Of a stretch of 64,000 nt of DNA, positions 1 through 21,650 are shown piece by piece. Made by a program: the position numbers and the translations under genes. Numbering within the stretch: the first letter of the stretch is position 1; the number at the start of each line of letters is the position of its first letter. The stretch is taken from positions 124,001 through 188,000 of IMG/VR virus record IMGVR_UViG_3300043446_003193; one strand, given 5' to 3'. The notes beneath the pieces are model-generated. The model worked only from the letters and a program-made list of their open reading frames with translations, was not told where the DNA came from and made no database searches.

Positions 1-1878
1 TCCAATATATAAATCATCCCAAAGATGTGTAGGGTCTCCTAAACTATATGCACTATATGTTACATTAGTTGCAGGTATTACATTTTGATTTAATGAATTT
101 AAGTAAGATGCAGTTAATGAATTTACTGCGTTTGAAGCAGTTACATATGCTATTGGTGTCCAACTTGCAGTATAAGGTGAACCTGCTGAAACTTGTAAAA
201 CATATCCTGCATAAGATGAACTAATAGAAGGTAAGTCACCACCTATTGTACCAATTGCCCAACCTGCTGCCGCTTCAGGGAATGTAATTAGAGATGAAGT
301 GTTATCCGTTAATACAATTGTTTGAGGAATTATTTTCTCGTAATTACTGTCAAATGTTTGGATATTAACAAATCTATCTCCAAAATTATGTTCAAATCTC
401 CATTCTAAAGAAGATGTAAAACTTTGTTTAACTGTTCTACCATTCACTTCAATTATACCACCAATACCTGCTACCGCGTATCCAGCAACTGGTGTACCAA
501 ATTCTAAAACTAAAGTATTCACATCAGTTGCAGTAATGGTTTGTGGAAGAACTATTTGTCCGGAATTATTATAAACCGTTACATTTGGATATTGTACATT
601 TAAATTATGCGTGAATGTCCAAGTTGCTGCAGAGGTAGTTTGTGTATGTATTTTTCCACCTCCAGTTAATCCGGTCAATAGAGAACCATCACCTTTGAAT
701 GAACCAGTAAATGAACCAGTGAACGGGTCTGTTAAGGTTACAAATTGTGCAGATCCAGATATTAATGTAGGTTTTTCAGTTAATTCAGTAAATGTAATTG
801 GTGTACCTACTTGTCTATATCTTAAATCTAAAGATGCTGTTGTTTGTTCTGAACCACTAATAATTCCGCCTGGTTTATTTGCAATATTGTCCCAAGTTGT
901 TTGAGTTATTGAACCGCTTAAAACATATCTATTATCGTATGAAGCGGTCAATTGTGCAGATGAACTTACTAAACCATTTGATGCAGATATTGGGCCCGTT
1001 ACTTGTAAAGTACCATTAACTATTATTTTATTTCCACCCGTTTGAGTAATAATAGAATCGGAAATGTGGTCATCTCCACTTGCTACCGGAAGATATCCAG
1101 TTGTTAAACCAATTTCATTTCCCAAAGAACCCGTATTTTTAGGTCCTGCTATTAATATTGCCGAACTATATGCTGCTCCAGATGGATTTTCGTATATCCA
1201 ATGATTATTTACCGAATCCCACCAAAGAGAACCGGTTCCAGATGTACTTCCAGAATCTTGTACACTTATACCACCAAAACGAACTGCAGGTGTTGCTGTA
1301 TTTAATAAAACCGTATTTGTTCCAATACTTACTGCCGAACCCGTAATATTTTGAATTGATGATGTACCTTGAACAATTAAATTTTCAGTTACATATAAAG
1401 AACCACTCATTATTTGTGTTCCTTTAAATGTATTTGAACCAGTTGTTGCAAATGAAGATTCAATTACATCTAATCTTGTATCAATTGATGCGGATAAAAC
1501 ATTTGTACTTGCTGCACTTGCACTAAATGATGTTGCAACGGAGGAACTAAAGTCTCCAGTAACAGTTGAAACCGAAGCAGATAATGCTGAAATATTTGCA
1601 TTACTTGCACTTATTGATGTTGCAACGGAAGAAGAAAATGATTGTGTAAATGAATTAATAGCAGATAACGAAGTATCAACCGATGCCGATTTTGCTTCCA
1701 AAGAATTTAATCTCAATGCCTGTGAACCACTATCTGTTGATAATTCATTAAGCCTTTGATTAATTGAAGCGGAAGCAGCTAAAAACGAAGACGATACTGC
1801 TGTATATCTAGGTATTTCTGCTGTTTGTCCGGCTTGCTGTATTAAGGAACCGGTTATAATAGGACTATCTAAAATCAT
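1..1878 (-). CDS. Fibre/virion structural protein, truncated at the left window edge (not in ORF track)
   Basis: ATG at 1878 (MILDSPIITGSLIQQAGQ...). Segments I translated stay in this frame towards position 1. Shares ATTGSNTF, NLIVQG..NIG.N...RFGG..DSGS, QTTWDNIANKP and TWTFTHNL modules with the neighbouring fibre genes. Confidence 0.85.
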   Translation of the reverse strand, partial: MILDSPIITGSLIQQAGQTAEIPRYTAVSSSFLAASASINQRLNELSTDSGSQALRLNSLEAKSASVDTSLSAINSFTQSFSSSVATSISASNANISALSASVSTVTGDFSSSVATSFSASAASTNVLSASIDTRLDVIESSFATTGSNTFKGTQIMSGSLYVTENLIVQGTSSIQNITGSAVSIGTNTVLLNTATPAVRFGGISVQDSGSTSGTGSLWWDSVNNHWIYENPSGAAYSSAILIAGPKNTGSLGNEIGLTTGYLPVASGDDHISDSIITQTGGNKIIVNGTLQVTGPISASNGLVSSSAQLTASYDNRYVLSGSITQTTWDNIANKPGGIISGSEQTTASLDLRYRQVGTPITFTELTEKPTLISGSAQFVTLTDPFTGSFTGSFKGDGSLLTGLTGGGKIHTQTTSAATWTFTHNLNVQYPNVTVYNNSGQIVLPQTITATDVNTLVLEFGTPVAGYAVAGIGGIIEVNGRTVKQSFTSSLEWRFEHNFGDRFVNIQTFDSNYEKIIPQTIVLTDNTSSLITFPEAAAGWAIGTIGGDLPSISSSYAGYVLQVSAGSPYTASWTPIAYVTASNAVNSLTASYLNSLNQNVIPATNVTYSAYSLGDPTHLWDDLYIG

Positions 1879-1896
1879 TTCTCCGTTTTATTTAAG

Positions 1897-1905
1897 TATA
1901 AATAT
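1897..1905 (-). promoter_or_regulatory. Putative late promoter motif ATATTTATA
   Basis: Intergenic, 18 nt upstream of ATG 1878. Confidence 0.65.
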
Positions 1906-1912
1906 CTTTATG

Positions 1913-2236
1913 TTATGGTTTTGGGTATTTTGCTTTTACTTCTAAACATTTTTGTATATAAGCATCAATTTGTTCTTGATCTCCTTTTACAATCCCATCT
2001 AAATAATCCGTAATTGGTGGATATTCCAATTTTCTCCTTCTTTGATAATTCAATGCATTATATTCGGAAATCAATTCTGCTCTTTTTTCTTCAATATCGG
2101 ATGGTAATGTTATAATATTGCCATCCATATCTACAAGTTCTCCATTTATATTAGCACCCTTAATACCATATTTTTCATTTAATACTGAAATATCATCAAT
2201 ATAATCTATATCTATTATTTTATTTTTATTTATCAT
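1913..2236 (-). CDS. Putative tail-fibre assembly chaperone
   Basis: 107 aa directly after a fibre gene. C-terminal YQRRRKLEYPP...VKAKYPKP resembles small phage fibre-associated chaperones. Confidence 0.55.
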   Translation of the reverse strand: MINKNKIIDIDYIDDISVLNEKYGIKGANINGELVDMDGNIITLPSDIEEKRAELISEYNALNYQRRRKLEYPPITDYLDGIVKGDQEQIDAYIQKCLEVKAKYPKP

Positions 2237-2250
2237 AATTATTTATTTTT

Positions 2251-5200
2251 TTATATCCAATATCCCATTATCCATAATCCAATATAATGTGTACCTCCGG
2301 AATAACCAGTAGCTAAATTTGCATAAACACTTCCATTACTATTTACATTTATTATACCACTATCCATAAGACCGTAATATTGAACACCATTTGTTGTATT
2401 TGCGTTGGATGCATCACCATCATGCCATAATACAAATGATCCATAATCTGATCTAGTAAAAGTGCTTGCTGAATATGGGTATGGTCCTCCTGGTCCTGAC
2501 CAAGGATATGGAGTTGTATCAGTTGATGTACCAAATAAAGATACCGCATGATCACCTTGTCCTGCACCACCACTATATCCAGTAATATGATACCAACCCA
2601 ATACTTGAAGTGCTTTTACACCAGATGGTAAACCTAATCCGGTTGTTGAAAATGATGTTTGAACATTACCAGTTACCGATGCACACCATCCAATTGATGT
2701 TGTTAATACACAATATGTGTGTGCTTTGTAGTTTGCGGTACTAATAATTGGAACCGATGGACAAACAGCATTTGGATGTATTGATAATTTTGCCGTGTTA
2801 TTTGTATAGAATACGTGTCTAGAATTTGTTGCATCTCCACTAGAATGATATTGTATATCATAAATTGGTCCAGAAGTAAATCCATGTATAGTTGCTCCAG
2901 AATTAAATAAGTAAAGTTTTAATGAACCATCAGTATATCCACTTGAATAATCATTATTAAATCTTAATGCTGATGGTGTTGCTGTATTTACTTGTGCTGC
3001 ATTGTTTCCCGTATCAATTAAAATATTTCTTTTATCTTTAATTCTAAATCTTTCATCAAAAGTAGAACCATTCCACATTGTGAATATCATATCGGAACAG
3101 TTTGATCCTGCAGACCCACCTATATTACAAACTTTAATTTGTGCGTTACCAAGACCTGCACCGGCTGTACTGTTATCTACTCCAAAATCAATTCCGGTTG
3201 AAGTTCCTGCTGTATTACTACAATTTGTTAAAGTTATAGATGCCGCATATCCTCCAGCAGATACTCCATTTATATGTAACGTGCTTTCCGGAGATGCAGT
3301 TCCTAATCCCATTGCTCCTGAACCTTGACAGAAAAATATTACATTATTTCCTAATTCATTTATATAAAGTGGTTTTGAACCATGTGACTGTATCCAAGAA
3401 TAACTACAACAAGATACACCCATTCTCAAAGTTGCTCCAGTTGGTGAACCTAATCTTAACATACCCGTATTAGAGTCTCCAGTATTACCACATATATCTA
3501 ATAAAAACGATGGAGTACACGTTCCAATTCCAATTTTACCATCACCCTTTATAAACATTAAAGGTTTTGATACACCGCAGTTTGGCGTGGTACTTGTTCC
3601 AAAATAGATACCATTGTTAGGATCACTGCCGGAATAATCATATACTGCTATATGCAATGCTTCACCAAATGTTCCCGCAGTTTGACAAGTATATTCTTTA
3701 TATCCTATAAATCCATTTAATCCATTATCAGTAAATGCTATACCTTGCATTGCTCCATATGCCGAACTGCAGGTTCTCATTTCTATAAGTTGGTGATTAT
3801 CACTATCTATTAAAAGTAATGTATTTGCGTTTGGTGCACCTGCTCCATTTGGACAACTTGCATAAATGTGAACTTTTGCTAATGCAGAATTTGTTCCTAT
3901 ACCAATTTTTCCACCATCTCTTTGTAAATATAAATCTCTAACAACTCCAGCAGGTGTATATGATTGGATTACTGCTCCACATGCAGTTTGTCCACCAATT
4001 CTTAATTCTCCCGTTGAACTTCCAATTCTTGTATGCCAAACATCATAATCACAATAAACGTGTAAAATTGAAGTTGGGCAAGCGGTATTAATACCCACAT
4101 TACCATTTGGTAACCAAGATGTCCTTACAGTTCCACCAACATTATCAAAAACATATAAATTATCTGTACTATCATTATTTAATTGTAACCACCATTTAAT
4201 ATTTCCTGCGGTTGAAAATTGAATATTTGCTTCCGTATTTACATTACATGCTCTATCAATACGAATACCACCAACTCCATCTCCGGTTGTAGAATTATAT
4301 ACTGTAAATTGTAAACAAGGTGTTGATGTTCCTATACCAATTTTACCACCAATTATATTATTACCACCAAAACATGCATTACCAGTAGAACAAACTGTTC
4401 CAGAAGATAATATAGATGGTGAACATACTGCGGTAGAACCATATAATGTAGTTCCACTTAAAGTTCCTCCTACAAATGCACCGGCACATGATGTACCAAA
4501 ACAACCTATTGGTGAACATGCAATTGTAGATGCATAATTAGTTGTTCCACTCATTGTACCACCAATAAATGATGTAGCACATGCTGTACCAAAACATCCT
4601 ATTGGTGAACAAGATATAGTTGATGAATATGTTGTTGTACCTGTTATAGTACCAGTTCCTATTAAATTATTTTTAACACAAGTTGTTGTACCATCATCTA
4701 CAATGCAAGAATCTACAATATGAAAACCACTTTGTACTTTCGGAATGATATTTGTACTTAAACGAGTTTCATTGCCCAAATTATTATAAGTTTCTGGACC
4801 AGTGATCATTATTGATGATGTTAGTGCCGCTCCACTTACAATTTGGTGAACAAATATCCATTCATTATCAACAGAATCAAATAATAACGAACCAGAAACT
4901 TGCGGTGATGAACCACTATCAATTGCTGCCAATCCTGAAAATCTACTTGAAGGGTTTACAGAGTTTACTGTTATTAAATTAGTACCAATATTAAGAGTAC
5001 TTTGAGAAATATATTGTATTGATGATGAACCTTGTACTACTAAATTTTGACTAATATATAACGAACCTGTAATTGTTTGGTCGGCTTTATAAATATTTGA
5101 ACCAGTTGTTGCTAAACTTCCTGTCTTATTTTCTAATGAGTTTAATCTTGAAATATTAGATGCTGATACAGTTTCTAATGAATTAATTCTTGAAATATTA

Positions 5201-5643
5201 GATGCCGAAATTGTTTCCAATGAACCTATTCTACTTAAATTTGAAGCAGATATTGTTTCAATAGAATTTAATCTTGCCGAAGTAGAAGATGTAAATGTAT
5301 TGATATTAGTTATAGAAATATCAACACTTGAACTTTTACTCTCTAAACTATTTAATCTTCCAATATTAGAACCAGAAACTGTCTGTAAAGTAGTTAATTG
5401 AGATGAAACGGAAGAACTAAATGGATTAAATGAAGAAGTAAATACAAAAGCAGAAGCGGAATATCCATTTAATGTATTTGAATTGTCCGCAGTACCAGTT
5501 ATAGTAGTACTTCCTAAATTAATACTATTGATTTGTGAAAAGTTTGCAGTTGATCCTGAAAATGAAATAGTTCCGTCTGCAGATGCTGATATCTGTGCTA
5601 CTATATTTCCACAACTGTCTTTAAATCTATATTGTCCTGCCAT
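2251..5643 (-). CDS. Tail fibre / receptor-binding protein with Cys-rich distal region
   Basis: 1130 aa; coiled-coil repeats, ATTGSN module and repeated G(K/N)(I/V)GIGTxxP fibre repeats. Confidence 0.75.
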   Translation of the reverse strand: MAGQYRFKDSCGNIVAQISASADGTISFSGSTANFSQINSINLGSTTITGTADNSNTLNGYSASAFVFTSSFNPFSSSVSSQLTTLQTVSGSNIGRLNSLESKSSSVDISITNINTFTSSTSARLNSIETISASNLSRIGSLETISASNISRINSLETVSASNISRLNSLENKTGSLATTGSNIYKADQTITGSLYISQNLVVQGSSSIQYISQSTLNIGTNLITVNSVNPSSRFSGLAAIDSGSSPQVSGSLLFDSVDNEWIFVHQIVSGAALTSSIMITGPETYNNLGNETRLSTNIIPKVQSGFHIVDSCIVDDGTTTCVKNNLIGTGTITGTTTYSSTISCSPIGCFGTACATSFIGGTMSGTTNYASTIACSPIGCFGTSCAGAFVGGTLSGTTLYGSTAVCSPSILSSGTVCSTGNACFGGNNIIGGKIGIGTSTPCLQFTVYNSTTGDGVGGIRIDRACNVNTEANIQFSTAGNIKWWLQLNNDSTDNLYVFDNVGGTVRTSWLPNGNVGINTACPTSILHVYCDYDVWHTRIGSSTGELRIGGQTACGAVIQSYTPAGVVRDLYLQRDGGKIGIGTNSALAKVHIYASCPNGAGAPNANTLLLIDSDNHQLIEMRTCSSAYGAMQGIAFTDNGLNGFIGYKEYTCQTAGTFGEALHIAVYDYSGSDPNNGIYFGTSTTPNCGVSKPLMFIKGDGKIGIGTCTPSFLLDICGNTGDSNTGMLRLGSPTGATLRMGVSCCSYSWIQSHGSKPLYINELGNNVIFFCQGSGAMGLGTASPESTLHINGVSAGGYAASITLTNCSNTAGTSTGIDFGVDNSTAGAGLGNAQIKVCNIGGSAGSNCSDMIFTMWNGSTFDERFRIKDKRNILIDTGNNAAQVNTATPSALRFNNDYSSGYTDGSLKLYLFNSGATIHGFTSGPIYDIQYHSSGDATNSRHVFYTNNTAKLSIHPNAVCPSVPIISTANYKAHTYCVLTTSIGWCASVTGNVQTSFSTTGLGLPSGVKALQVLGWYHITGYSGGAGQGDHAVSLFGTSTDTTPYPWSGPGGPYPYSASTFTRSDYGSFVLWHDGDASNANTTNGVQYYGLMDSGIINVNSNGSVYANLATGYSGGTHYIGLWIMGYWI
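4420..4650 (-). repeat. Coding 93-nt (31-aa) Cys-containing tandem repeat
   Basis: GTT.Y.ST..CSPIGCFGT.CA..F.GGT.S repeated about 2.4 times. Confidence 0.8.
5125..5290 (-). repeat. Coding 42-nt (14-aa) tandem repeats
   Basis: RLNSIETISASNLS / RIGSLETISASNIS / RINSLETVSASNIS; related copies near 7765-7910. Confidence 0.8.
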
Positions 5644-5653
5644 TTATTTTTTA

Positions 5654-8191
5654 TTAATAATTATTACCTGATATTGTTATTTTTCCTGTTAAGCTTTCAA
5701 TTGAGAAAATTCTAACTTCTCCCCATACAAAAGATGATGAACCTAAACTTGAAGAGAAATCTACTTTTACTACACTTCTACATGTACCATCAATTGCAAC
5801 GGTCATTGGTGCATGTGTATTAATAGCACATCCAGAACCACCGGTTATTAGGTTACTATCTGTAATAGATGCTGTTCCTCCAACAAATCTATTAACACCA
5901 TATGTTCTTAAAGAAGTCTGTGTATAAGAATCACTTACACCTTGTAATCTTGAACCATATTCAATCGTAAAAATTAATTCTTGGAAACTATCATTATTAT
6001 CTATTGTAACTAAACAAACAGTTCTTGCAGTACCACTTCCAGTAGTTTTTTCAATATAAAATGGAATTTTATACCATTGTCCACCGGTATGGTAATCATA
6101 TCCTTTTCTTGATAATGAACCACCCGAACATATGGTACAAGCAAAACAAGATATACCGGTACTATCAATACGAAGTCTTTGGCCTCCATCTGCTACAGCT
6201 CCAGTTCCGTATAAAACATCTCCAGCTGTTCCTGCATTTGCTCTTGTATAAAATGTTATACCTTCATTATAATACTGCCTAATAAAACTACCATAATATC
6301 CATTATTCATTTGAACAATAGTATTAGCAATAGCTTGGGATGAGATAGCATTATGTCCTAATACTCCCATTTGTCCACTTGGTGTTGCACTTAAAGAATT
6401 ATAAGAATTAACACAATAAACAGAAGAAAATATTGATGTACTAGCAAATAATACAGGTGTACAAACTTGACAACTAAAACAAGCAATTCCTGTTGCTGCA
6501 AACGTCAATCTAGCTGTATAACAAGTACCTATGGATAGAGGAAACGCGCATCTGGTAGATATAAAGTAATCGTCATTGAATACTTGTATGTCGTTAGCAG
6601 CAAAGTGAGTATATCTATTTGAATCACTTTGACCCACTCCAATACCTGTAGCAGTTCCTCCGGTTATAACTTTTAATATTCCTCCTGCTGTATTTACACC
6701 TGCTCCTGAAGTCATGATATTCATTGCTGGTGCACAAACTTGACAACTAAAACAAGCTATACCTGTACTAGTAATACGCAATCTTTCAGTATTTAAGTAA
6801 GTAGCAAAGCGAATTGTATCTGCTACACCGAATCCTATATTTAATTCATTTCCAGAACCTAAAAAAAGTGTTTGCCCCAATGTTCCATCTGCTCTTTTTA
6901 TGAAAATTCCTTTATCATTTGATAAATTTATATTATCTGTTGTAGTAAGTGTTAATGCGCAAACATTACCAGAAAAACAAGCATTACCGCTTCTATCCAA
7001 TAACATTCTACTTGTATAAGTACCAACTCCATTATTTGTATAAACTTGTAAACCTGTTCCAGTTGATAATGCTACTTTCTCATTATATCCCGTTGTTATT
7101 TCAAAGTTGGTACCAGGACTATTAAGACTAAGTCCTGCTGTTGCTTGATTTGAATATCCCCATTGAATATACCCATCTGTAAACCCACCAACTGAACACC
7201 CTTTTATTGTTATTGATGAAGAATTGGTTGTGTTACCCACAACAAGATTACATGCTATTGTTGTAGTATTACCAAAACATGCGGTTCCTGTACCTATTAA
7301 ATTATTTTTAATACAGGTCGTAGTACCATTATCAAATATACAAGAATCAGTAATATGAAAACTATTAGTTGATTTTGGAATTATATTCGTAGTTAAACGA
7401 GTTTCATTACCGATATTATCGTAAGTTTCGGGACCAGTAATTACGGTAGAAGATGTTACAGCAGTGTTTCCTGCATGAACAAAAATCCATTCATTATCAG
7501 TTGAGTCAAAATAAAGTGAGCCACTCTTTCCCGCTGCACTACCACTATCAATTGCAGATATACCAGCAAATCTAACCGATGGGTTTGCGGTATTTAATAG
7601 GACGGTATTTGTACCAATATTAACCGCCGATGCAGTAATGTTTTGAAGTGAAGAACTACCTTGAACTACTAAGTTATTTTGAATATAAACAGTTCCACTT
7701 ATAATTTGGTCTCCGTTAAATGTGTTACTACCAGTAGTTGCTAATGAACCAGTTTTATTTTCTAACGAATTTAATCTTACAATATTTGAAGCGGATATTG
7801 TTTCAATAGAATTTAATCTTGCAGAAGTAGATGAAGTAAATGCTTCTACACTTCCTAATCTTGCGATGTTTGAAGCAGATATTATTTCAATAGAATTTAA
7901 TCTTGCCGTAGCAGATGCTGTAAATGTATTAGTTCCGGAATTACTTGCAGTAAATGAGTTTAATGAAGAAAGAATACCAACTACTTGTTCACTTCCACTA
8001 ACTAAAGTTGGAACACCTGTTAAGTTTGTATAACTAATAGAACCGGTTAATGCTGATGCAGATACTGCTCCTACAATACTTTGGTCACCTACGAATGTAT
8101 TTGAACCAGTTGTTGTATAAGCTCCTAAATCATTAAATGCATCACCATTTACCGAGAAACTACCAGTAATTATCGCTGAATCTATTCTCAT
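5654..8191 (-). CDS. Tail fibre protein, paralogue of 2251..5643
   Basis: 845 aa; N-terminal third closely similar to the 1130-aa gene (SGSL.FDS.DNEWIFVH, ITGPETY.N.GNETRL); ERLRI/GIACFS repeats distally. Confidence 0.75.
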   Translation of the reverse strand: MRIDSAIITGSFSVNGDAFNDLGAYTTTGSNTFVGDQSIVGAVSASALTGSISYTNLTGVPTLVSGSEQVVGILSSLNSFTASNSGTNTFTASATARLNSIEIISASNIARLGSVEAFTSSTSARLNSIETISASNIVRLNSLENKTGSLATTGSNTFNGDQIISGTVYIQNNLVVQGSSSLQNITASAVNIGTNTVLLNTANPSVRFAGISAIDSGSAAGKSGSLYFDSTDNEWIFVHAGNTAVTSSTVITGPETYDNIGNETRLTTNIIPKSTNSFHITDSCIFDNGTTTCIKNNLIGTGTACFGNTTTIACNLVVGNTTNSSSITIKGCSVGGFTDGYIQWGYSNQATAGLSLNSPGTNFEITTGYNEKVALSTGTGLQVYTNNGVGTYTSRMLLDRSGNACFSGNVCALTLTTTDNINLSNDKGIFIKRADGTLGQTLFLGSGNELNIGFGVADTIRFATYLNTERLRITSTGIACFSCQVCAPAMNIMTSGAGVNTAGGILKVITGGTATGIGVGQSDSNRYTHFAANDIQVFNDDYFISTRCAFPLSIGTCYTARLTFAATGIACFSCQVCTPVLFASTSIFSSVYCVNSYNSLSATPSGQMGVLGHNAISSQAIANTIVQMNNGYYGSFIRQYYNEGITFYTRANAGTAGDVLYGTGAVADGGQRLRIDSTGISCFACTICSGGSLSRKGYDYHTGGQWYKIPFYIEKTTGSGTARTVCLVTIDNNDSFQELIFTIEYGSRLQGVSDSYTQTSLRTYGVNRFVGGTASITDSNLITGGSGCAINTHAPMTVAIDGTCRSVVKVDFSSSLGSSSFVWGEVRIFSIESLTGKITISGNNY

Positions 8192-11100
8192 TATTCTCCT
8201 ATTTTATTTTCTAATTGTTTAACTTTTTCCGATAACTCTTTTACTGCTCCGATTAACAATGCTGTTACTTTTGAGTAATCTAACAACATTACTTCTTCGT
8301 ATGTATTTCCTATAAGTATTTCTTTTTTCGTCACTAATTCTGGTTGAACATCATAAACTTCTTGAGCAATCATACCAATTTGTTTAACTCCTTCGTTGTT
8401 GTATTCACTAACCCAATCAAAAGTATATCCGTTTAATTTCTCTACTTTGTCCAATGAGTTTTCAATCAATTCTAAATTAGTTTTTAAACGATTGTCAGAG
8501 GTTGTATTAAAGTTTTGTGCGTCTACATCACCCGTAACAACCAATGAACCAGTGAACTGATATGAACCATTGCCCATATCGTTTAGTCCGTTCATTATTC
8601 TCGGACCACCTTTAGAAAGTATTGCGTTTCCGGCTGTTGGTATTGCAAAAGTTAAAGTTAAAGTATTTGCATTTGTTGCCTTTATCGTTTGTGGTAATAA
8701 CATTTCATCGTTACTATCATAAACATTTACATTAACATATTTGTAGTTAAGTCCGTGATTAATTGTCCAAGTTGATGCCGATGTTGCTTGGTTATAAAGG
8801 TATCTGTCTCCGGATAAGTTTGAAATACCACCAACGGAAACATGCGCAAATCCATTTTCAGCAGATGCAAATGTAATTGTAAGTTGTGTATTAGAAACTT
8901 TTGTTATTTCATCTGGTATAATTACTTTACCACTATTATCATAAATTGTAACTGATGGATAATCGTATTCTAAATTATGCGTAACTGTCCAAGTTGTACT
9001 CGCTACACTTTGTGAATGTAAATATCTACCACTATCAATGTTTGCATTATCCAATATAAGAGAACCAGTAATAATTAATGAACCAGTGATTATTTCAGTA
9101 CCAATAAATGTATTTGAACCAGTAGTTGCTAATCTACTATATCCAATTAATGTATTTATATCGTTTCCAACTTCTACATATCTTAAATCATATGAAGATG
9201 TTAATTGAGCCGCTCCACTTACAATTCCTGCTGGTTTGTTTTCAATATTATCCCAAGTCGTTTGAGTGATACTTCCACTTAAAACATATCTTGTATCATA
9301 AGAAGATGTAAGTTGAGAAGAACCACTAATCAACCCTAAACCATTTGAAAATATTGAACCAGATACTCCGAAAGAACCAGTAACTTCTGCACCATTACCA
9401 CTCACTCTGAATTTTCTTAACCAAGTACTTCCGTTAAATTCTGCAACATTGAATCCACTACCACCACTATTTCTAGTATCAAATACAAATTCAGAAGAAC
9501 CTCTTTGTCCTAAATCTGCATAATTGTTACCAAACATTTGATAATATGGTCCGTATATTGTAGAACCATCAAACATTCCAAACAATGTATTTGCAGTTGC
9601 ACTATGTACTTGCAATTGTCCATTATTTCCTAAAACAATACTTCCAAGAGTTTTTATAGAACCGGTAAACGAATGTATATCATCTGAACTATCACCAAAT
9701 TTAGTAGAACCACTTTCATATGCTACAAAAGATGTAGTTAATTGTGTTTGTATTTGTTGAGCTACTAAAGTTCCAGTAATTGTTAAACTTCCAGTTATTA
9801 CCTGATTACCATTAAAATTATTTGAACCAGTTGTTGCTAAACTTCCACTTTTAAGTTCTAATGATGTTAATCTATTATTTACAGAAGAACTTAATGCAGT
9901 TATGTTTCCGTTACTTGCACTAAATGATGTTGCAACTGAAGAACTAAAATCTCCGGTAACAGTTGATACACTTGCACTTAAAGAAGTTATATTAGCATTA
10001 CTTGCTGAAATAGAAGTTGCAAAAGCTCCACTTACTGAACTCAATGATGCTGAAACTGAAGAACTTAATGAACTTAATTCCGCATCAGTTGCGTATGTTG
10101 TATTCAAAGAAGAACTCCAACTTTCTAAATTTACAAATCTACTATTTAATGAAGAACTAAATGTAGAATATCCAGTTGTTGAACTTAATGTAATTTGAGA
10201 TGAACCAGAAACTAATGTAGGTTTATTTGCTACATTTGTATAAGAAATATATGATGATGTTTGTGAATTTGATACCGATGCACTCACTATTGATTGCCAA
10301 CTTGCAAATCCATTTTGAACTTGTAAAGTATATCCTTCGTAAGAAGCACTAATAGATGGTAATCCACCACCAACACTTGCTACGACTGTACCAGTTGTTG
10401 GATAAGGGAAATAAATTATAGCTTGTCCACTATCTACGGTTTCAATTCTTGATGGTATAACTACATCTCCAGAAGGTCCAAATACTTCAAATACAGGATA
10501 TTTGTCACCAATATTATGTTGGAATATCCAAGTATCAGATGCAACTGATACTGTTAATCTTTTTGAAGTTCCTTGAGTTGATACACCACCAATACTTGCT
10601 ACTGCATAACCGGTTCTAGCTGATGAAAACACAATATCCATTGAAGAAGTAGTCATTGACTCAATTCTTAATGGCTGTATTACTTGATTATTATTATCAT
10701 AAACGGTTACTACCGGATGTAAATTTTCTAAATTATGTGTGAATGACCAAGTTTGAGCTGCTACCGATTGTGATAATTGTGCAAAGTTTACAGTGTCTAA
10801 TGCAATACCGGTACCAGTATTTGTACCAGTAAATGATATTGATGCTGTTCCACTTGCTAATACAACATTTATTCCAGAACCAGTTTCAAAATTTAATTGT
10901 CCTGCAGTTCCTAAAAATGTACTACCCGTTGCAATTGTTACACCACTTCCCGCTGCAATAATACCATATAATCCACTACCATCTCCACTAAATGCACCAG
11001 TAATTGCAGATGCAGAAACTGTTGATGCTGATATATGTGTAATGTTTAATGAATCAATTGATGTTCCACTTAATTGAGATGAACCAGATATTAATCCATC

Positions 11101-11520
11101 TGGTCTATTTGCAATATTATCCCAAGTTGTTTGTGTTATTGAACCACTTAAAACATATCTTGTATCATAAGAAGAAGTTAATTGAGAAGAACCAGAAACA
11201 ATACCGGATGGTTTATTTGCAATATTATCCCAAGTCGTTTGAGTAATACTTCCAATTAAAACATAACGGAAATCTAATGAAGATGTAACTTGATTTGAAG
11301 AACTTACAACATTTGCTAAATTTGGAGCAATAACATTTCCACTTACAAAAAGAGAACCAGAAATAGTTTGGTCACCAATAAAAGTATTTGAGCCGGTAAT
11401 AAAACCATTGACGTTTCTAGTTTCCCATAAACGAGTAGTCTCATTAAAAAATGGGATATGGTTCTGTTTTGGAGAACTTATATTAACTTCTATGGGTTTT
11501 CTACCTATTAACTTTGACAT
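8191..11520 (-). CDS. Fibre protein with C-terminal peptidase S74 intramolecular chaperone
   Basis: C-terminal TSDNRLKTN...LNGYTFDW...GMIAQEV...DYSKVTALLIGAVKEL is the S74 signature; four TW.(F/I/V).H(N/G)L-type domains. Confidence 0.8.
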   Translation of the reverse strand: MSKLIGRKPIEVNISSPKQNHIPFFNETTRLWETRNVNGFITGSNTFIGDQTISGSLFVSGNVIAPNLANVVSSSNQVTSSLDFRYVLIGSITQTTWDNIANKPSGIVSGSSQLTSSYDTRYVLSGSITQTTWDNIANRPDGLISGSSQLSGTSIDSLNITHISASTVSASAITGAFSGDGSGLYGIIAAGSGVTIATGSTFLGTAGQLNFETGSGINVVLASGTASISFTGTNTGTGIALDTVNFAQLSQSVAAQTWSFTHNLENLHPVVTVYDNNNQVIQPLRIESMTTSSMDIVFSSARTGYAVASIGGVSTQGTSKRLTVSVASDTWIFQHNIGDKYPVFEVFGPSGDVVIPSRIETVDSGQAIIYFPYPTTGTVVASVGGGLPSISASYEGYTLQVQNGFASWQSIVSASVSNSQTSSYISYTNVANKPTLVSGSSQITLSSTTGYSTFSSSLNSRFVNLESWSSSLNTTYATDAELSSLSSSVSASLSSVSGAFATSISASNANITSLSASVSTVTGDFSSSVATSFSASNGNITALSSSVNNRLTSLELKSGSLATTGSNNFNGNQVITGSLTITGTLVAQQIQTQLTTSFVAYESGSTKFGDSSDDIHSFTGSIKTLGSIVLGNNGQLQVHSATANTLFGMFDGSTIYGPYYQMFGNNYADLGQRGSSEFVFDTRNSGGSGFNVAEFNGSTWLRKFRVSGNGAEVTGSFGVSGSIFSNGLGLISGSSQLTSSYDTRYVLSGSITQTTWDNIENKPAGIVSGAAQLTSSYDLRYVEVGNDINTLIGYSRLATTGSNTFIGTEIITGSLIITGSLILDNANIDSGRYLHSQSVASTTWTVTHNLEYDYPSVTIYDNSGKVIIPDEITKVSNTQLTITFASAENGFAHVSVGGISNLSGDRYLYNQATSASTWTINHGLNYKYVNVNVYDSNDEMLLPQTIKATNANTLTLTFAIPTAGNAILSKGGPRIMNGLNDMGNGSYQFTGSLVVTGDVDAQNFNTTSDNRLKTNLELIENSLDKVEKLNGYTFDWVSEYNNEGVKQIGMIAQEVYDVQPELVTKKEILIGNTYEEVMLLDYSKVTALLIGAVKELSEKVKQLENKIGE

Positions 11521-11529
11521 CTTCTTCTA

Positions 11530-11877
11530 TTAGTTATTTGCGTTTTCAAGAACTGATAATACTACTTCTAATGATCCAGATTGTGTAGTTCTCATAATCA
11601 ATGCGTCATTTCTTTCTAAAATTACTTTACCAGGAAAAGGATTTAATGCTTCTCCAACTGGAATATGTGCGTTGTATATCAAAGATGATAATGCTAAAGA
11701 ACCACTCTTTTGAACTTGAACCGTTACAGTTTGTTCACTACCGGTAACATTCGTTACTGCAGCAGATAAAAGGATTGTAGCTAAGTCTTGGTCTTCCTGA
11801 TATATTGTGTTACTTCCACTTGCTAAAGTTTTAGTAATTACTCTGAATCTATTTAAAGGTAATTGACTAGTTGCCAT
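11530..11877 (-). CDS. Small virion structural protein
   Basis: 115 aa beta-rich (LNRFR...GKVILE...LSVLE); resembles small proteins that follow beta-helix structural genes in T4-like phages. Confidence 0.55.
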   Translation of the reverse strand: MATSQLPLNRFRVITKTLASGSNTIYQEDQDLATILLSAAVTNVTGSEQTVTVQVQKSGSLALSSLIYNAHIPVGEALNPFPGKVILERNDALIMRTTQSGSLEVVLSVLENANN

Positions 11878-11887
11878 AATTTATTTT

Positions 11888-14800
11888 TTAATTTTCTAAT
11901 GCTAAGTTTAATGGTGTAAATTGTGCCGATAATGCTTTTGTAAATGTTCTACCTTCAATTGTTCCGGTAGCTTGTCTAATTACAAAATCATTTCCTGCAT
12001 AAAAATCACCTGTTTCATCTCCTGATGTGTGGAATACTCTACCACCACTCACTTCGGAAATTCTAATATCATAATTTGTTTCTCCCACACCACCCTGATT
12101 TACAGGTAATGCTAAGAAGTTAACCCCTGCACCTGCATATGAAAAATCATGTGAAGTTGAAGTGATTAATGAACCAAACTCTTCTAAATATTCTTTTCCT
12201 GCTCCTTGAATAACAACTGTATCTATTGTGTTAATAATAACATCAAATAGTTGTCCAATTTTATTTTTTGCAGGAACACTTAAAGTTGTAAAATGTGAAT
12301 CTGGATCAGTTATAATATATTCTTTCATATATTGCCAAGCCAAAACAAAATCACCTGCTAAAGAGCCGGATGTATTTGATATTTGTGGTATCACCGTAAT
12401 TACTCCTTGTGTAAATGATGAAGTTGCTGCAACTGGTAAAGTATATAATCCAGTTCCAGAAATATCTTGTCCTTTAAATAATCCTTGTGTAAATTGTGAA
12501 GTTCTTGCTGCTTTTGGAACTAATAAATCAGCTGCAATAGCATCAACTACTAATCCACTATCTGTTATTGTAGAAGCATATCTACTACCACTTCCACTCA
12601 CATATGATGATGCATAACTACCTGATAAAGCTAGTTTGTTTATCATATATGTTTGTATATTACTCTTTTGTGCCGAAACTAAAAGAGAAGCATCGGTATC
12701 AATTGATGCACTTACTGCTGAAATATCAGGTTTAACTAACATTCTTAAACCTTCTGCTCTTAACCCATAATCACCAAATGTAGTATTTGAGTTTAATAAA
12801 GAAGCATGTCCTCCATCAATACAATATACACCAGTACTACTAAAGTTTGTAAAGAATGATACCAATTGTCCATATCCTCTACCTCTAATACAAATACCAA
12901 TACCATTAAATGCTACCTGTGTGTAAGCATCTACAATCATTGATTTAAGTGGTGAGTAAGGATGTAATACTGAATCATCTACAATCATTCCACCAGGTCC
13001 GTTTCCTACCAATGGATTATTATTTTCATAATCTAAAGGTACATAGAATTTATCAGCCGGCGTTGAAATTGCAGAACAGTTTTGAACATATGGAGAAGTT
13101 ACGATATAAGCGTTTGGTGCGAATGCAAAAAAGAATCCTTGTCTTGGGTCATCTAAATCATCAATTTCACAACCCTCTAATCTTAATCCCCAACAATATG
13201 TACCATTATTCATTAAGAATAAATTCTCACCTTTTGTTCCAGTTGTAGGTCTAACCACAACACTTCTCAAATCATCTCCCAATATAGAAACATTTGATGG
13301 AACTGTAATTGGTGCTTCCTCAACATAGTATCCACTTTTTACTTGAACACTTTGTCTATAAACAGGAAGACCAGGATTTGCTGCTAATGAAGCGGATGCA
13401 GCTGTTATTGCCGCTTTTATAGTTCTGAATGAAGTTGAAAGAGTTTTACCATCGTTTGTATCTAATCCATCTTCACTTACATACCAAACTTTTTCAGTTA
13501 CACCTATATCAGTTAATCCTGCACCAGAACCACTAAGAGCAGTTGCTATTAAAGTTCCACCAACTGTCAAACTATCTCTTAAACTAACTGAACCTGTAAT
13601 TAAAAGTGAACCGGATATTACAACTGAACCTGTAAATTCATGCTTATCGTCTCCGGTATTTCCAAATTTGTTTGAACCAGAAGTATATAGAACAGATGAA
13701 GAAACTAGGGTTACATGATATTCTTTTGCTGTAATAGTTCCAGTTACATCTAAATTACCACTTATTATTTGATTATCTCTAAATGTATTTGAACCCGTTA
13801 ATGCAATCTTATCAATGTTTGTGGTTTGTAATACATCTATTTGAACTGAACCTGAAACTAATGTAGGTTTTTGTCCAATGTTAGAATATAATACATTTGA
13901 TGCGGATGTTGCAGTTGATGCATTACCATACAAAGAACCACTAATTTGTGTAGCTTGTAAAATACTAGCGGATATTGTATTAGTTGAATATAATGAACCC
14001 GTTAATTGATAAGTTCCATTTAATGATTTTGAATTAACCCATTGTCCACCATTAAATACTAATGTATCTCCAGCGGAAATACCACTAATTGCTACATCTG
14101 ATAATCCTCCTAAAGTTACTGAAATTGGATTTGTTCCACTTGCACCAATTCCATTGATACTTCTAAATAATCCACCTTGTATAATTGCCGCAGTATTACT
14201 ATCTGCTAAATTGGTACAGTCTGCTCTTACTAAAAGATACGCTACAAATATTCCGTTTTGTGCCGTATTAGGTGCTTCAACAAATGATTCATTACTAATT
14301 GCGTTTTGTGCATTTAATAATGTAGTGTATTGGCCATTACCATAATAAACTATAAAAGCGTTTGTAGGTGAATTTGGTATCCAAAACACTCTTTGAATTG
14401 TCCATTGATAGTTATTTGGATTTGTACCATCTACGGTTGTTAATAAACCTGTTGTTTGATCAACATATTTTGTTGGGTCAATTACCGAATATCCCGAATT
14501 TCCTACTCCCGTATCAATTATAGAAGTTGAACCACTAAGATGATAACGATATATTTTTGAAGTATTTATTGCACTTTCAGAAATACTTGATGGGTGATTT
14601 GGATTATTAACATAGTTTGCACCTTGTTTATAAGAAACACCGGCTCCTTTTACAATACTTAATGTTGAACCACTTGGAGCCAATGTATGACCTGATATTT
14701 TTAAAGGTCCAAATGCTCTTGTAAAATCATCATTTTGTTGTTGTGCTCCGTATGCAATTTGTGGTGAATTATATACACCAGTTGATACACTTCCGCTTAA

Positions 14801-15562
14801 ATGAAGTACAACACCTAAACTTATTTCAGTATCCCATTGATTTATATCCGCACTACCCCAAGCATTAGTTTGTTGTACATCTTGTCCATATTCATCAATA
14901 CCAACATATGTTATTTTTGCCGAACCAGAATACTTTATCGGTAAATTGGTTTTTGCATCCCAACTTACTTTTTTAACTGTTGGAAATGGATCTTGAGTAA
15001 GGGATGCATTTAACTTAACAATAAGACCCTCACCTGCTGATATACTAAATGTAGTTGAACCAGGCGTAGAACTCAATACACCACCTTTAAGAACACCTGT
15101 GTAAAGATTACTTTCTAGCCATCTTAAACGAGTTACATTGGTATATCCTTCTCCGTTTTGTGAAAAGTATAAATCATTTGTTGAACCGGAAACATAAATA
15201 TAAGATGCTGAAATAGAAGTATCTATATTAGTAGATACTGGCATAAATTGAACATACCCCTTAATAGTTTCACTACCAGATACATTTAATGCTCCAGTTA
15301 AAGATGTTACACCAATTAAAGTATTTGAACCCGTTGTATATAATGATCCTGTAATTACTACATCTCCGATAGTATTTAATGACCCACTATTTTGTGTATT
15401 TGTTGTGAAAATCTCTTGAATAGTTTCACCATTGGAGCCAGATTTTTCAAAATAAATCTTACCATCGTAAGTATTTATCGCTAATTCTCCTAAATCTAAT
15501 TGAGCAGTAGTTGGACGGTTTCCAGCTACGGCACTCCTACGCAACTTAATTGTTTGGGCCAT
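11888..15562 (-). CDS. Fibre/spike with Mtd_N-like N-terminus and pectin-lyase-like beta-helix
   Basis: N-terminal IKLRRS...P...L.LGELAINTYDGKIYF; internal WYVS.DG.D.NDG...FRTIKAA...VKSGYYVE..PI.VP..VSI.GDDLR is a typical beta-helix cap. Confidence 0.7.
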   Translation of the reverse strand: MAQTIKLRRSAVAGNRPTTAQLDLGELAINTYDGKIYFEKSGSNGETIQEIFTTNTQNSGSLNTIGDVVITGSLYTTGSNTLIGVTSLTGALNVSGSETIKGYVQFMPVSTNIDTSISASYIYVSGSTNDLYFSQNGEGYTNVTRLRWLESNLYTGVLKGGVLSSTPGSTTFSISAGEGLIVKLNASLTQDPFPTVKKVSWDAKTNLPIKYSGSAKITYVGIDEYGQDVQQTNAWGSADINQWDTEISLGVVLHLSGSVSTGVYNSPQIAYGAQQQNDDFTRAFGPLKISGHTLAPSGSTLSIVKGAGVSYKQGANYVNNPNHPSSISESAINTSKIYRYHLSGSTSIIDTGVGNSGYSVIDPTKYVDQTTGLLTTVDGTNPNNYQWTIQRVFWIPNSPTNAFIVYYGNGQYTTLLNAQNAISNESFVEAPNTAQNGIFVAYLLVRADCTNLADSNTAAIIQGGLFRSINGIGASGTNPISVTLGGLSDVAISGISAGDTLVFNGGQWVNSKSLNGTYQLTGSLYSTNTISASILQATQISGSLYGNASTATSASNVLYSNIGQKPTLVSGSVQIDVLQTTNIDKIALTGSNTFRDNQIISGNLDVTGTITAKEYHVTLVSSSVLYTSGSNKFGNTGDDKHEFTGSVVISGSLLITGSVSLRDSLTVGGTLIATALSGSGAGLTDIGVTEKVWYVSEDGLDTNDGKTLSTSFRTIKAAITAASASLAANPGLPVYRQSVQVKSGYYVEEAPITVPSNVSILGDDLRSVVVRPTTGTKGENLFLMNNGTYCWGLRLEGCEIDDLDDPRQGFFFAFAPNAYIVTSPYVQNCSAISTPADKFYVPLDYENNNPLVGNGPGGMIVDDSVLHPYSPLKSMIVDAYTQVAFNGIGICIRGRGYGQLVSFFTNFSSTGVYCIDGGHASLLNSNTTFGDYGLRAEGLRMLVKPDISAVSASIDTDASLLVSAQKSNIQTYMINKLALSGSYASSYVSGSGSRYASTITDSGLVVDAIAADLLVPKAARTSQFTQGLFKGQDISGTGLYTLPVAATSSFTQGVITVIPQISNTSGSLAGDFVLAWQYMKEYIITDPDSHFTTLSVPAKNKIGQLFDVIINTIDTVVIQGAGKEYLEEFGSLITSTSHDFSYAGAGVNFLALPVNQGGVGETNYDIRISEVSGGRVFHTSGDETGDFYAGNDFVIRQATGTIEGRTFTKALSAQFTPLNLALEN

Positions 15563-15614
15563 ATCTATGGTTCTTATTACAGTATATACTAAAAAATGAC
15601 TTATATAAGTCTCT

Positions 15615-15623
15615 TATAAATAT
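15615..15623 (-). promoter_or_regulatory. Putative late promoter motif ATATTTATA
   Basis: Directly after a terminator, upstream of 15562. Confidence 0.65.
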
Positions 15624-15652
15624 AAAAGGATTGATGTTTCCACCAATCCTTT
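15624..15652 (-). terminator. Intrinsic terminator
   Basis: Minus strand AAAGGATTGGTG-GAAA-CATCAATCCTTTT: long stem, GAAA loop, U tract, downstream of 15680..17593. Confidence 0.75.
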
Positions 15653-15679
15653 CCAATTTAATTTTTTATGTTCGTTCTA

Positions 15680-17593: not shown

Positions 17594-17626
17594 TTGCTTT
17601 ACTTTATTGTTATGGTTATTCTAATC

Positions 17627-17635
17627 TATAAATAT
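17627..17635 (-). promoter_or_regulatory. Putative late promoter motif ATATTTATA
   Basis: Intergenic, upstream of 17593. Confidence 0.65.
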
Positions 17636-17670
17636 GTTTTTTTCATATAAAAGTGATGATTTGGATTAAA

Positions 17671-18009: not shown

Positions 18010-18034
18010 TATCTACTTTGTGTATATTATTATC

Positions 18035-18043
18035 TATAAATAT
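18035..18043 (-). promoter_or_regulatory. Putative late promoter motif ATATTTATA
   Basis: Intergenic, upstream of 18009. Confidence 0.65.
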
Positions 18044-18049
18044 TATTAA

Positions 18050-19144: not shown

Positions 19145-19156
19145 AATTTATACTAT

Positions 19157-21649: not shown

Positions 21650-21650
21650 T

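What the first reader, a model, noticed from the sequence alone, without database searches (positions are those of the whole stretch)
2251..7345. Abrupt Ser/Thr-to-Cys switch in the distal halves of two fibres
Seen: the 1130- and 845-aa fibres are nearly Cys-free until the same homologous point (FHI.DS-C, near 4705 and 7340). After it they carry Cys every 5-30 residues, about 30 in the longer protein by my count. Cys sits in positions where such repeats usually hold S/T/N (GIGTCTP, GINTACP, GIACFSCQVC), and the S-x-S motif thins out there. The equivalent segments of the paralogues (HISDSIIT in 1..1878; AIGDSYLI in the 637-aa gene) have no Cys, and I see none in the 1109-, 637- or 830-aa fibres. 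The spacing does not match Zn fingers. Inference: a systematic hydroxyl-to-thiol replacement, serving inter-chain disulfides, a metal-binding ladder along the trimer axis, or a thiol-directed modification imported from another lineage.
Basis: partly seen in the sequence, partly recalled or inferred. Interest (0 to 1): 0.75.

Follow-up and report, generated by a model that had tools for sequence, protein, structure and literature searches.

The report
Cysteine-rich distal modules of phage fibres
Two tail-fibre genes of an uncultured 209-kb aquatic phage change, at a shared recombination junction, from a cysteine-free shaft to receptor-binding modules with 3-4% cysteine at fixed motif positions that relatives fill with Thr, Ser, Gly or Asn; these are most likely disulfide staples, an unusual but family-wide variant of a known fibre architecture.

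Summary
Fibre A (2251..5643, minus strand) has 1 Cys in residues 1-312 and 31 in residues 313-987. Fibre B (5654..8191) has 0 in residues 1-283 and 22 in residues 284-804. The pattern is not special to these two genes. At least seven fibres of this phage, fibre arrays on two related large contigs, and about 100 metagenomic homologues show the same switch.

The switch falls at the most conserved stretch shared by five paralogues. Nucleotide identity is 0.8-0.9 there and random 30 codons later, so it is a cassette boundary.

Cys spacing is strongly non-random: CxxC, Cx4C, Cx5C and Cx8C. Cys co-occur in pairs. They sit in or beside the 'capping-loop' motif of trimeric beta-helix fibre modules, in a junction hairpin and in the tip knob.

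Cys-free homologues carry T-x-x-S-x-x-T where B has C-x-x-C-x-x-C, and T/T where B's knob has C726/C804. Other Cys columns hold G, N, A or I. The hydroxyl-to-thiol idea is therefore partly right.

The most likely role is local disulfide staples formed after lysis. No thiol-modifying or oxidising enzyme was found in the genome. The bonds themselves are untested.

The parts
2251..5643 (-). Fibre A gene (1130 aa)
   Evidence: ORF listed. 32 Cys. No Pfam or PHROG hit. 106 metagenomic homologues of the distal part.
4708..5643 (-). A residues 1-312: Ser-rich, Cys-poor shaft with about 14-residue repeats. It holds a single Cys, at residue 11.
   Evidence: This part is 62% identical to B over A89-348 / B64-317. 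Cys11 is conserved in five otherwise Cys-poor homologues.
4642..4827 (-). A residues 273-334: conserved junction or adaptor (ITGPETY..GNETRL..NIIPK..FHI.DS-C-I.D.GTTT-C-.KNNL.GTGT) holding the first Cys pair, C313 and C322 (Cx8C around a D-G turn).
   Evidence: Five paralogues share it. Nucleotide identity is 0.78-0.89 for codons -40 to +20 around the first Cys and falls to 0.27-0.35 beyond codon +30.
4372..4611 (-). A residues 345-424: two and a half copies of a 31-residue repeat, C-SPIG-C-FGTx-C-...; the outer Cys pair is conserved and the middle Cys is optional.
   Evidence: The same module is found in more than 25 homologues. Co-occurrence of 345/355 has phi 0.54 and of 376/386 phi 0.71; position 381 is Lys in 16 of 33 homologues.
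3034..4356 (-). A residues 430-870: five beta-helix-type modules, each opened by a G-x-[IV]-G-[IL]-[GN]-T-x-x-[PA] capping-loop motif. It has 17 Cys, several at motif positions +7/+8 and +16/+17.
   Evidence: The motif equals the capping-loop consensus of PMC10769870.
2254..2682 (-). A residues 988-1130: Cys-free C-terminal tip.
5654..8191 (-). Fibre B gene (845 aa)
   Evidence: Of its 66 homologues, 65 are Cys-rich.
7343..8191 (-). B residues 1-283: Cys-free shaft.
7250..7342 (-). B residues 284-314: junction Cys quartet at 284, 293, 305 and 314 (spacings 9, 12, 9).
   Evidence: C293 and C305 are conserved in 33 of 36 and 31 of 34 homologues; C284 and C314 are optional.
6125..7249 (-). B residues 315-689: four beta-rich modules, each ending in R-L-x-I-x-x-x-G-x-x-C-F-x-[CG]-x-x-C. 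These are Cys-variant capping loops at 405/411, 480/483/486, 571/574/577 and 682/685/688 (window 6959-6979, 6734-6754, 6461-6481, 6128-6148). There is also a Cx8C pair, 548/557 (window 6521-6550).
   Evidence: The AF2 model is all-beta with mean pLDDT 77. A profile hit to the Bd3182 fibre (8ojn) aligns the triad with the capping loop.
5657..6124 (-). B residues 690-845: C-terminal beta-sandwich knob with Cys 726, 788 and 804.
   Evidence: The AF2 model has mean pLDDT 86. The best Foldseek matches are C-terminal parts of Acinetobacter phage tailspikes 6e1r, 5w5p and 8oq0. The three positions read CCC in 29 close homologues and TST or other S/T combinations in the Cys-free clade.

Best explanation
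A and B are modular trimeric tail fibres of a large uncultured aquatic phage.

Architecture. A Ser-rich, Cys-free shaft ends in a highly conserved adaptor. This adaptor serves as a cassette-exchange junction among at least five paralogues. Downstream lie interchangeable receptor-binding cassettes: beta-helix-type modules bounded by capping loops, followed by a tip domain.

Where the Cys sit. In one lineage of these cassettes, small residues at structurally fixed positions have been replaced by Cys, in pairs or triads. These positions are Thr/Ser/Gly/Pro in the capping loops, Gly/Asn or Ile/Ile at hairpin or strand ends, and Thr/Thr in the knob.

Proposed mechanism (inferred, not shown). The fibres fold in the reducing cytoplasm. 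After lysis into oxic water, neighbouring Cys close short-range disulfides: Cx8C, Cx5C or CxxC, and a cross-strand pair in the knob. These bonds rigidify surface loops and module edges and make the exposed distal fibre more resistant to unfolding and proteases. Triads and odd Cys counts leave room for some inter-chain bonds or free thiols.
For: Shown:
- The abrupt switch sits at a shared junction.
- The same pattern occurs in at least 7 fibres of this genome, in the related contigs L002 and L003, and in about 100 homologues.
- Cys spacing is non-random. Gaps of 3, 9, 6 and 5 are enriched 3.4x, 3.0x, 2.0x and 1.6x, while gaps of 1, 2, 4 and 7 are depleted.
- Cys are gained and lost in pairs. 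C at +1 of the GIGT motif goes with C at -8/-9 in 24 of 31 instances (Fisher p = 3e-27). Pair 548/557 has phi 0.69, pair 376/386 phi 0.71 and pair 480/486 phi 0.54.
- Knob residues 726/804 are C/C in one clade of 37 and T/T in the sister clade, with one nested T/T reversal.
- The junction pair flanks a D-G/N-G turn, and its two positions change together across paralogues: I/I, A/G, Y/S and C/C.
- The triads align with the capping loop of the solved trimeric fibre Bd3182, which is a surface feature (PMC10769870).
- The genome has no Erv1, DsbA, radical-SAM or LanC gene.

Precedent: disulfide networks are known in the tails of phage Milano and cyanophage Pam3 (PMC10811340, PMC9942802). A disulfide is also reported in a Bdellovibrio fibre tip.
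Against: - No bond was observed, and no trimer model or coordinates were available, so S-S distances could not be measured.
- 43 of 104 Cys-rich family members have an odd number of Cys.
- Triads occur with any two of the three Cys: CGC, TCC, SCC and CCT. The connectivity is therefore not fixed.
- Two knob homologues have C726 without C804.
- Co-occurrence statistics are inflated by shared ancestry.
- The phage encodes no oxidase, so oxidation would have to be spontaneous.
- AF2 gives low confidence to the triad stretches themselves.
Confidence: 0.55

Rival explanations
1. The Cys stay reduced and act as thiolate ligands for metal ions or clusters. This could be Zn, Fe or Cu bound by the CxxCxxC triads of three chains, or an Fe-S cluster. 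The metals would stabilise the trimer or take part in receptor binding.
For: CxxCxxC is a classic metal or Fe-S spacing, and B has three copies with the outer Cys highly conserved. Metals in phage tails have precedent. Lambda gpL carries an Fe-S cluster held by four Cys (PMC10721106). T4 gp37 carries His-bound iron; that point rests on my own knowledge. Odd Cys counts are common in the family.
Against: Ligand positions are not invariant: CGC, TCC, CSC, CNC, SCC and the fully hydroxyl TST all occur in the same motif. Most Cys come as covarying pairs, not as single axis-facing columns. The triad aligns with a surface capping loop, not with the trimer axis. Virions in oxic water would oxidise exposed thiolates. 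The only Pfam Cys-rich hit (TNFR_c6) scores 15.8 bits against a cut-off of 29.4.
Confidence: 0.12
2. The Cys form a redox-sensitive device. Disulfides, or CxxC pairs able to exchange, hold the distal fibre in a primed state. They are reduced or shuffled at the host surface and so trigger the next step of infection.
For: CxxC is the redox-active spacing, and triads with any two of the three Cys suggest exchangeable partners. DTT releases fibres and triggers contraction in Pam3. The Milano authors argue that disulfides must be broken for contraction.
Against: In Pam3 and Milano the redox-relevant Cys link the fibre N-terminus to the baseplate. Here the Cys are in the distal, receptor-binding part. 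No evidence of any conformational switch exists. This reading builds on the disulfide explanation and adds to it; the two are not exclusive.
Confidence: 0.12
3. The Cys are substrates of an enzymatic thiol modification, such as thioether cross-links, S-glycosylation or lipidation.
For: The Cys lie in S/T/G-rich stretches reminiscent of modified peptides. A block of genes inside the fibre locus encodes a DUF5672 protein and a 170-aa protein that looks to me, from its sequence alone, like a methyltransferase. The same DUF5672 block recurs in a related phage.
Against: The genome has no LanC-like or radical-SAM gene, and its single thioredoxin sits beside ribonucleotide-reductase-like genes. Nothing links the DUF5672 block to Cys. 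Pairwise Cys covariation is not expected for single-site modification.
Confidence: 0.04
4. The Cys have no special role. They are near-isosteric, selectively neutral replacements of Ser, Thr or Ala, inherited from one ancestor and spread by cassette shuffling.
For: Cys-free versions of every module exist and presumably work. In the knob, the Cys state maps to essentially one clade.
Against: Within the Cys-rich clade the positions are strongly conserved; for example, 486 is C in 36 of 40 homologues, 577 in 35 of 38 and 726 in 13 of 13. Spacing is far from random. Cys replaces Gly and Pro at loop-defining positions. The same enrichment recurs in unrelated module types.
Confidence: 0.07

Closest known systems
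Trimeric intertwined beta-helix fibre modules with 'capping loops': Bdellovibrio MAT fibres Bd3182, Bd2133 and Bd1334 (PDB 8ONC, 8OJN, 8OND, 8OML), and the S74-type phage fibres K1F endosialidase stalk and T5 pb1
   Same: Fibre A carries five copies of the capping-loop consensus V-G-G/N-x-x-x-P-x-x-x-L at module starts. A profile of B's modules hits Bd3182 and aligns B's triad with that loop. Foldseek lists the Bdellovibrio fibres among the neighbours of the module model. Both have a modular, mosaic architecture with varied tip domains, and a disulfide is reported in one tip.
   Different: A and B have no S74 chaperone domain. In B the Gly, Thr and Pro of the loop are replaced by three Cys. 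Cys density is 3.6-4%, whereas the word search of the MAT paper found no 'disulfide' or 'cysteine' and one legend reporting a single 'disulphide' in the Bd1334 tip. The sequence similarity is marginal (E = 0.0084).
Disulfide-networked phage tails: Agrobacterium phage Milano and cyanophage Pam3
   Same: In both, virion tail proteins are enriched in Cys, and disulfides seen in structures stabilise the particle. A's lone N-terminal Cys11 resembles their fibre Cys38 and Cys28, which bond to the baseplate.
   Different: There the bonds lie in the sheath and baseplate and at the fibre N-terminus, and structural proteins reach 2.1% Cys (Milano). Here the Cys are concentrated at 3.6-4% in the distal receptor-binding modules, in repeated sequence motifs, and no bond has been observed.
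P22 tailspike 'cysteine annulus' and the collagen or collectin type of inter-chain Cys knots
   Same: Both involve Cys pairs in a trimeric beta-helical adhesin that come together from three chains and assist registration or assembly.
   Different: The P22 disulfides are transient and absent from the native trimer. P22 has 8 Cys in all and no repeated Cys motifs.
Metal-binding tail proteins: lambda gpL Fe-S cluster; T4 gp37 His-Fe sites (the latter from my own knowledge)
   Same: Conserved Cys or His motifs in tail tip or fibre proteins bind metal.
   Different: gpL uses four invariant Cys in one compact domain. Here the triad positions vary between C, G, S, T and N and align with a surface loop.

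Membership tests
Beta-helix fibre modules with capping loops (MAT / S74-type fibres) | Capping-loop consensus V-G-G/N-pi-x-x-P-x-x-x-L at module edges | tested here: met
   A has 5 instances of G-x-[IV]-G-[IL]-[GN]-T-x-x-[PA]-x-x-x-[LVF]. Across the homologue set there are 635 distinct instances. B carries the Cys-substituted variant, aligned to the Bd3182 loop.
Beta-helix fibre modules with capping loops (MAT / S74-type fibres) | Detectable sequence or fold similarity to a solved member | tested here: inconclusive
   The profile hit to 8ojn/8onc has E = 0.0084 and 19 bits over 41 profile positions. Foldseek scores to 8ond, 8oml and 8onc are weak (E 0.3-2). The best match is 7chu_A, with rmsd 2.5 Angstrom over 93 columns.
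Beta-helix fibre modules with capping loops (MAT / S74-type fibres) | Intertwined homotrimer | not testable with these tools
   Only monomer AF2 was available, and coordinates are not returned.
Beta-helix fibre modules with capping loops (MAT / S74-type fibres) | C-terminal Peptidase_S74 chaperone (S74 subgroup only) | tested here: not met
   A and B have no Pfam hit. The neighbouring 1109-aa fibre does have one (E = 5.8e-16). A and B would therefore correspond to the non-S74 subgroup.
Disulfide-stabilised phage tail proteins (Milano / Pam3 type) | Cys enrichment of structural proteins over the proteome | tested here: met
   Distal halves have 3.6-4.0% Cys against a proteome value of 0.9%. The Milano benchmark is 2.1% against 1.4%.
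Disulfide-stabilised phage tail proteins (Milano / Pam3 type) | Disulfide bonds physically present in the virion | not testable with these tools
   This needs MS, non-reducing gels or a structure.
Fe-S or metal-binding tail proteins (gpL type) | Invariant set of ligand Cys | tested here: not met
   Triad census: CCC 56, CGC 12, TCC 9, TST 5, CSC 5, CNC 4, SCC 3.
Zn-finger / TNFR-like Cys-rich domains | Pfam model match above the gathering score | tested here: not met
   TNFR_c6 scores 15.8 bits against a cut-off of 29.4. No other Cys-rich family was hit.
Enzymatically cross-linked peptides (lanthipeptide or sactipeptide type) | Cognate modifying enzyme encoded nearby | tested here: not met
   LANC_like and Radical_SAM are absent from the complete 209-kb genome, and the Radical_SAM control genomes did match.

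The most novel reading that the evidence does not exclude
A lineage of large aquatic phages has built thiol chemistry into host recognition. In this reading, the surface capping loops of many receptor-binding fibres carry CxxCxxC or Cx5C sites that are functional and not merely structural. They would bind a metal or undergo thiol-disulfide exchange at the host envelope, giving a redox- or metal-gated adsorption step across a whole array of fibres.
Probability: 0.1. Interest if true: 0.85.

Novelty: new variant of a known kind. Interest (0 to 1): 0.55.

Why it matters
Phage structural proteins are normally Cys-poor, and disulfides in tails have only recently been seen, in Milano and Pam3. This case is different. 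A whole family of receptor-binding cassettes, known only from metagenomes, places Cys at defined positions of a recognised fibre motif. Natural Cys-free counterparts (TST against CCC, T/T against C/C) can serve as built-in controls.

If the Cys are disulfide staples, they show a second way to rigidify capping loops, in place of Gly and Pro. They would also help explain virion durability in oxic water, and they would matter for expressing such fibres, which would then need oxidising conditions. If the Cys are functional thiols or metal sites, that would be a new adsorption chemistry.

The junction also marks a precise cassette-exchange site in a phage that carries about 15 fibre genes.

Tried and rejected
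- DNA and protein searches against 50,697 isolate phage genomes found nothing for the A/B locus DNA, A's distal part, the junction region or B's knob. The modules are so far metagenome-only. The capsid protein's nearest isolates are Microcystis phage Mel-JY01 and the Flavobacterium 'immuto' phages, at 53-55% identity, so the host remains unknown.
- The IMG/VR scan failed with the alignment, which had no conserved stretch, and found no relative with the single protein.
- phmmer of both distal parts against PDB sequences found nothing. Only the profile search did.
- The ESM Atlas look-alikes were uninformative; its own model has pTM 0.21.
An alignment of the whole distal part of B (A1) was never folded.
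- Only monomer models without coordinates could be had, so Cys-Cys distances and axis or surface placement could not be measured. The adjacency of the strands bearing C726 and C804 is unverified.
- A global MAFFT alignment of A with its closest homologues was unreliable because the proteins are mosaics. BLAST without composition correction over-extended. Both were replaced by motif-anchored and HSP-based tables.
- Rejected: sequencing or code artefact. The Cys are ordinary TGT/TGC codons, conserved across independent samples.
- Rejected: DGR-type hypervariation, because the Cys are conserved, not variable.
- Rejected: recent foreign import, because GC3 is equal in both halves.

Full report
**Setting.** The window is bases 124001-188000 of a 209,443-nt IMG/VR virus record. 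CheckV rates it 100% complete, and its GC content is 31.8%. The record encodes a T4-like major head protein, a portal and a terminase. The nearest isolates by capsid protein are Microcystis phage Mel-JY01 and the Flavobacterium 'immuto' phages, at 53-55% identity. All fibre genes lie on the minus strand. The fibre locus runs from about 27 kb upstream of the window to about window position 21,650 and holds some 15 fibre-like genes.

**Observation.**
- Fibre A (2251..5643, 1130 aa) has 32 Cys: one at residue 11 and 31 in residues 313-987, with none after 987.
- Fibre B (5654..8191, 845 aa) has 22 Cys, all in residues 284-804.
- Distal halves hold 3.6-4.0% Cys, N-terminal halves under 1%, and the proteome 0.9%.
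- The 1109-, 637- and 830-aa fibres have none.
- The fibre cut by the window's left edge does have 9 Cys, but these lie beyond the window.
- Five further fibres upstream (783, 773, 1100, 813 and 789 aa) show the same Cys-free start and Cys-rich end. A 534-aa protein has 16 Cys spread from residue 4 onward.

**The switch is a cassette boundary.** A and B are 62% identical over A89-348 / B64-317 and cannot be aligned further on. Five paralogues share one junction...ITGPETY..GNETRL..N.IPK..FHI.DS-C-I.D.GTTT-C-.KNNL.GTGT(A-C-F). Their mean pairwise nucleotide identity is 0.78-0.89 from 40 codons before to 20 codons after the first Cys. It is only 0.52-0.67 further upstream and 0.27-0.35 from codon +30 on. 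GC3 is the same on both sides, 0.11-0.14. Across the boundary Ser falls from 0.15-0.21 to 0.10, Gly rises from 0.08 to 0.14, Thr is flat, and S-x-S motifs fall about five-fold. The composition change is therefore a change of domain type, not a one-for-one swap.

**The pattern is family-wide.**
- Of 106 homologues of A's distal part, 33 have more than 1% Cys with the same late onset. They share the module C-SPIG-C-FATS-C...C-SPVGKFTS-C.
- Of 66 homologues of B's distal part, 65 are Cys-rich, and B's Cys are conserved in them.
- An exhaustive search of 1.84 billion representative proteins found only 267 clusters at E up to 0.001. The more distant ones are mostly Cys-poor.
- Two related large contigs, of 223 kb and 124 kb, carry arrays of fibres with the same pattern.
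- None of 50,697 isolate phage genomes has these modules.

**Cys placement is ordered.** In 104 Cys-rich family members, gaps between successive Cys of 3, 9, 6 and 5 residues are enriched 3.4-, 3.0-, 2.0- and 1.6-fold over shuffles. Gaps of 1, 2, 4 and 7 are depleted.

Recurrent units:
- Cx8C: A 313/322, 522/531, 709/718 and 978/987; B 284/293, 305/314 and 548/557.
- Cx4Cx4C, inside a 31-residue repeat of A.
- Cx5C and CxxCxxC at the ends of B's modules.

In both kinds of triad the outer pair is conserved and the middle Cys is optional; it is replaced by Lys or Gly.

Co-occurrence:
- Cys at +1 of the G-x-V-G-I-G-T motif goes with a Cys 8-9 residues upstream in 24 of 31 cases (Fisher p = 3e-27).
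- Pair 548/557 has phi 0.69 and pair 376/386 has phi 0.71.
- These figures are inflated by shared ancestry.

**What the modules are.** A has five copies of G-x-[IV]-G-[IL]-[GN]-T-x-x-[PA]-x-x-x-L. A profile of B's modules hits the solved Bdellovibrio fibre Bd3182 (8OJN/8ONC) at E = 0.0084. The hit aligns B's G-I-A-C-F-x-C-x-x-C-x-P with G-R-V-G-V-G-T-T-A-P-T-S. That stretch is the 'capping loop' of the trimeric intertwined beta-helix, with consensus V-G-G/N-pi-x-x-P-x-x-x-L. The capping loop is a surface feature that bounds a cleft, and it is shared with K1F endosialidase and T5 pb1 (PMC10769870).

The AF2 monomer models agree in being all-beta:
- Modules B466-700: mean pLDDT 77. The best Foldseek neighbour is Geobacillus virus E2 ORF18, followed by weak matches to Bdellovibrio fibres, the Mu fibre and reovirus sigma1.
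- Knob B690-845: mean pLDDT about 90. It resembles the C-terminal parts of Acinetobacter phage tailspikes.
- The triad stretches themselves are modelled with low confidence.

**Testing 'hydroxyl to thiol'.** Cys-free homologues of B's modules read T-G-A-A-T-F-S-S-N-V-T where B reads T-G-I-A-C-F-S-C-Q-V-C. They have G and N where B has C548 and C557. Across 143 distinct motif instances the triads are CCC 56, CGC 12, TCC 9, TST 5, CSC 5, CNC 4 and SCC 3.

In the knob, positions 726/788/804 read CCC in 29 close homologues and TST in 13 distant ones. MAFFT places C788 in a two-residue insert. A tree built without those columns splits into a Cys-bearing half and a Cys-free half, each of 37 rows. 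One T/T sequence is nested in the Cys half, on a long branch.

Column-wise against Cys-poor homologues, S+T is 0.31 at A's Cys columns against 0.20 at random columns (p = 0.026). For B it is 0.44 against 0.23 (p = 0.006). Many Cys columns nevertheless hold G, N, A, V, I or L. The junction pair is I/I, A/G or Y/S in the Cys-free paralogues.

**Function.**
- The genome has no Erv1, DsbA, radical-SAM or LanC homologue. Its one thioredoxin lies beside reductase-like genes.
- Short fixed spacings, pairwise covariation, coupled changes at contact-like position pairs (T/T, I/I) and the surface location of the capping loops all fit local disulfides formed on exposure to oxic water. This is inferred, not shown.
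- Odd Cys counts in 43 of 104 proteins, and triads with any two of the three Cys, leave room for inter-chain bonds, free thiols, redox exchange or metal binding.
- Precedents: Milano and Pam3 for tail disulfides, P22 for transient inter-chain disulfides, and lambda gpL for an Fe-S cluster.
- An axial metal ladder is the least compatible with the capping-loop alignment.

**Verdict.** It is a Cys-rich variant of a known modular fibre architecture. Its most likely role is conventional (disulfide stabilisation), but its chemistry is untested.

Noticed in passing
window 1..21650 and about 27 kb upstream (genome 96.7-145.6 kb): A fibre locus of about 49 kb holds some 15 fibre-like genes. At least five are paralogues sharing one N-terminal shaft and junction but carrying unrelated distal cassettes. 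Related 223-kb and 124-kb contigs have similar arrays. This suggests a multi-fibre, possibly broad-host-range, virion.
   Followed up: partly
window 5611-5613 (A residue 11): The single N-terminal Cys of fibre A (..F-K-D-S-C-G..) is conserved at position 11 in five otherwise Cys-poor homologues (..[FY]-Q-C-G-[VI]-T..). It recalls the fibre Cys28 (Pam3) and Cys38 (Milano), which bond covalently to the baseplate.
   Followed up: partly
L004 3479-6352 (genome 111078-113951, upstream of the window): A four-gene block sits inside the fibre locus. It comprises a DUF5672 protein (Pfam E = 1.7e-25), a 235-aa unknown, a 170-aa protein with C17-x2-C20 that looks to me like a methyltransferase from its sequence, and a 299-aa unknown (phrog_8954). 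A similar block (299-, 228- and 261-aa genes, the last with DUF5672) recurs in the related contig L002. These may be fibre- or glycan-modifying enzymes.
   Followed up: partly
window 11530-11877 and 1913-2236; genome 117907-118254: Small ORFs of 115 and 107 aa (phrog_1276, phrog_9114) follow fibre genes repeatedly. A 107-aa ORF also precedes the B homologue in L003. They may be fibre assembly factors.
   Followed up: no
window 8191-11520: The Cys-free 1109-aa fibre ends in a Peptidase_S74 intramolecular chaperone (E = 5.8e-16) and carries repeated Ig-like or carbohydrate-binding-like segments. S74 and non-S74 fibres therefore coexist in one phage, as in the Bdellovibrio MAT family.
   Followed up: no
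window 38582-42667, 44610-49406, 49396-55491, 55768-58914: Four very large ORFs stand out. A 1361-aa protein has an N-terminal cytidylyltransferase-like part. ORFs of 1598 and 2031 aa were not examined. A 1048-aa protein matches SbcD-like and SbcC-like families in one chain.
   Followed up: no
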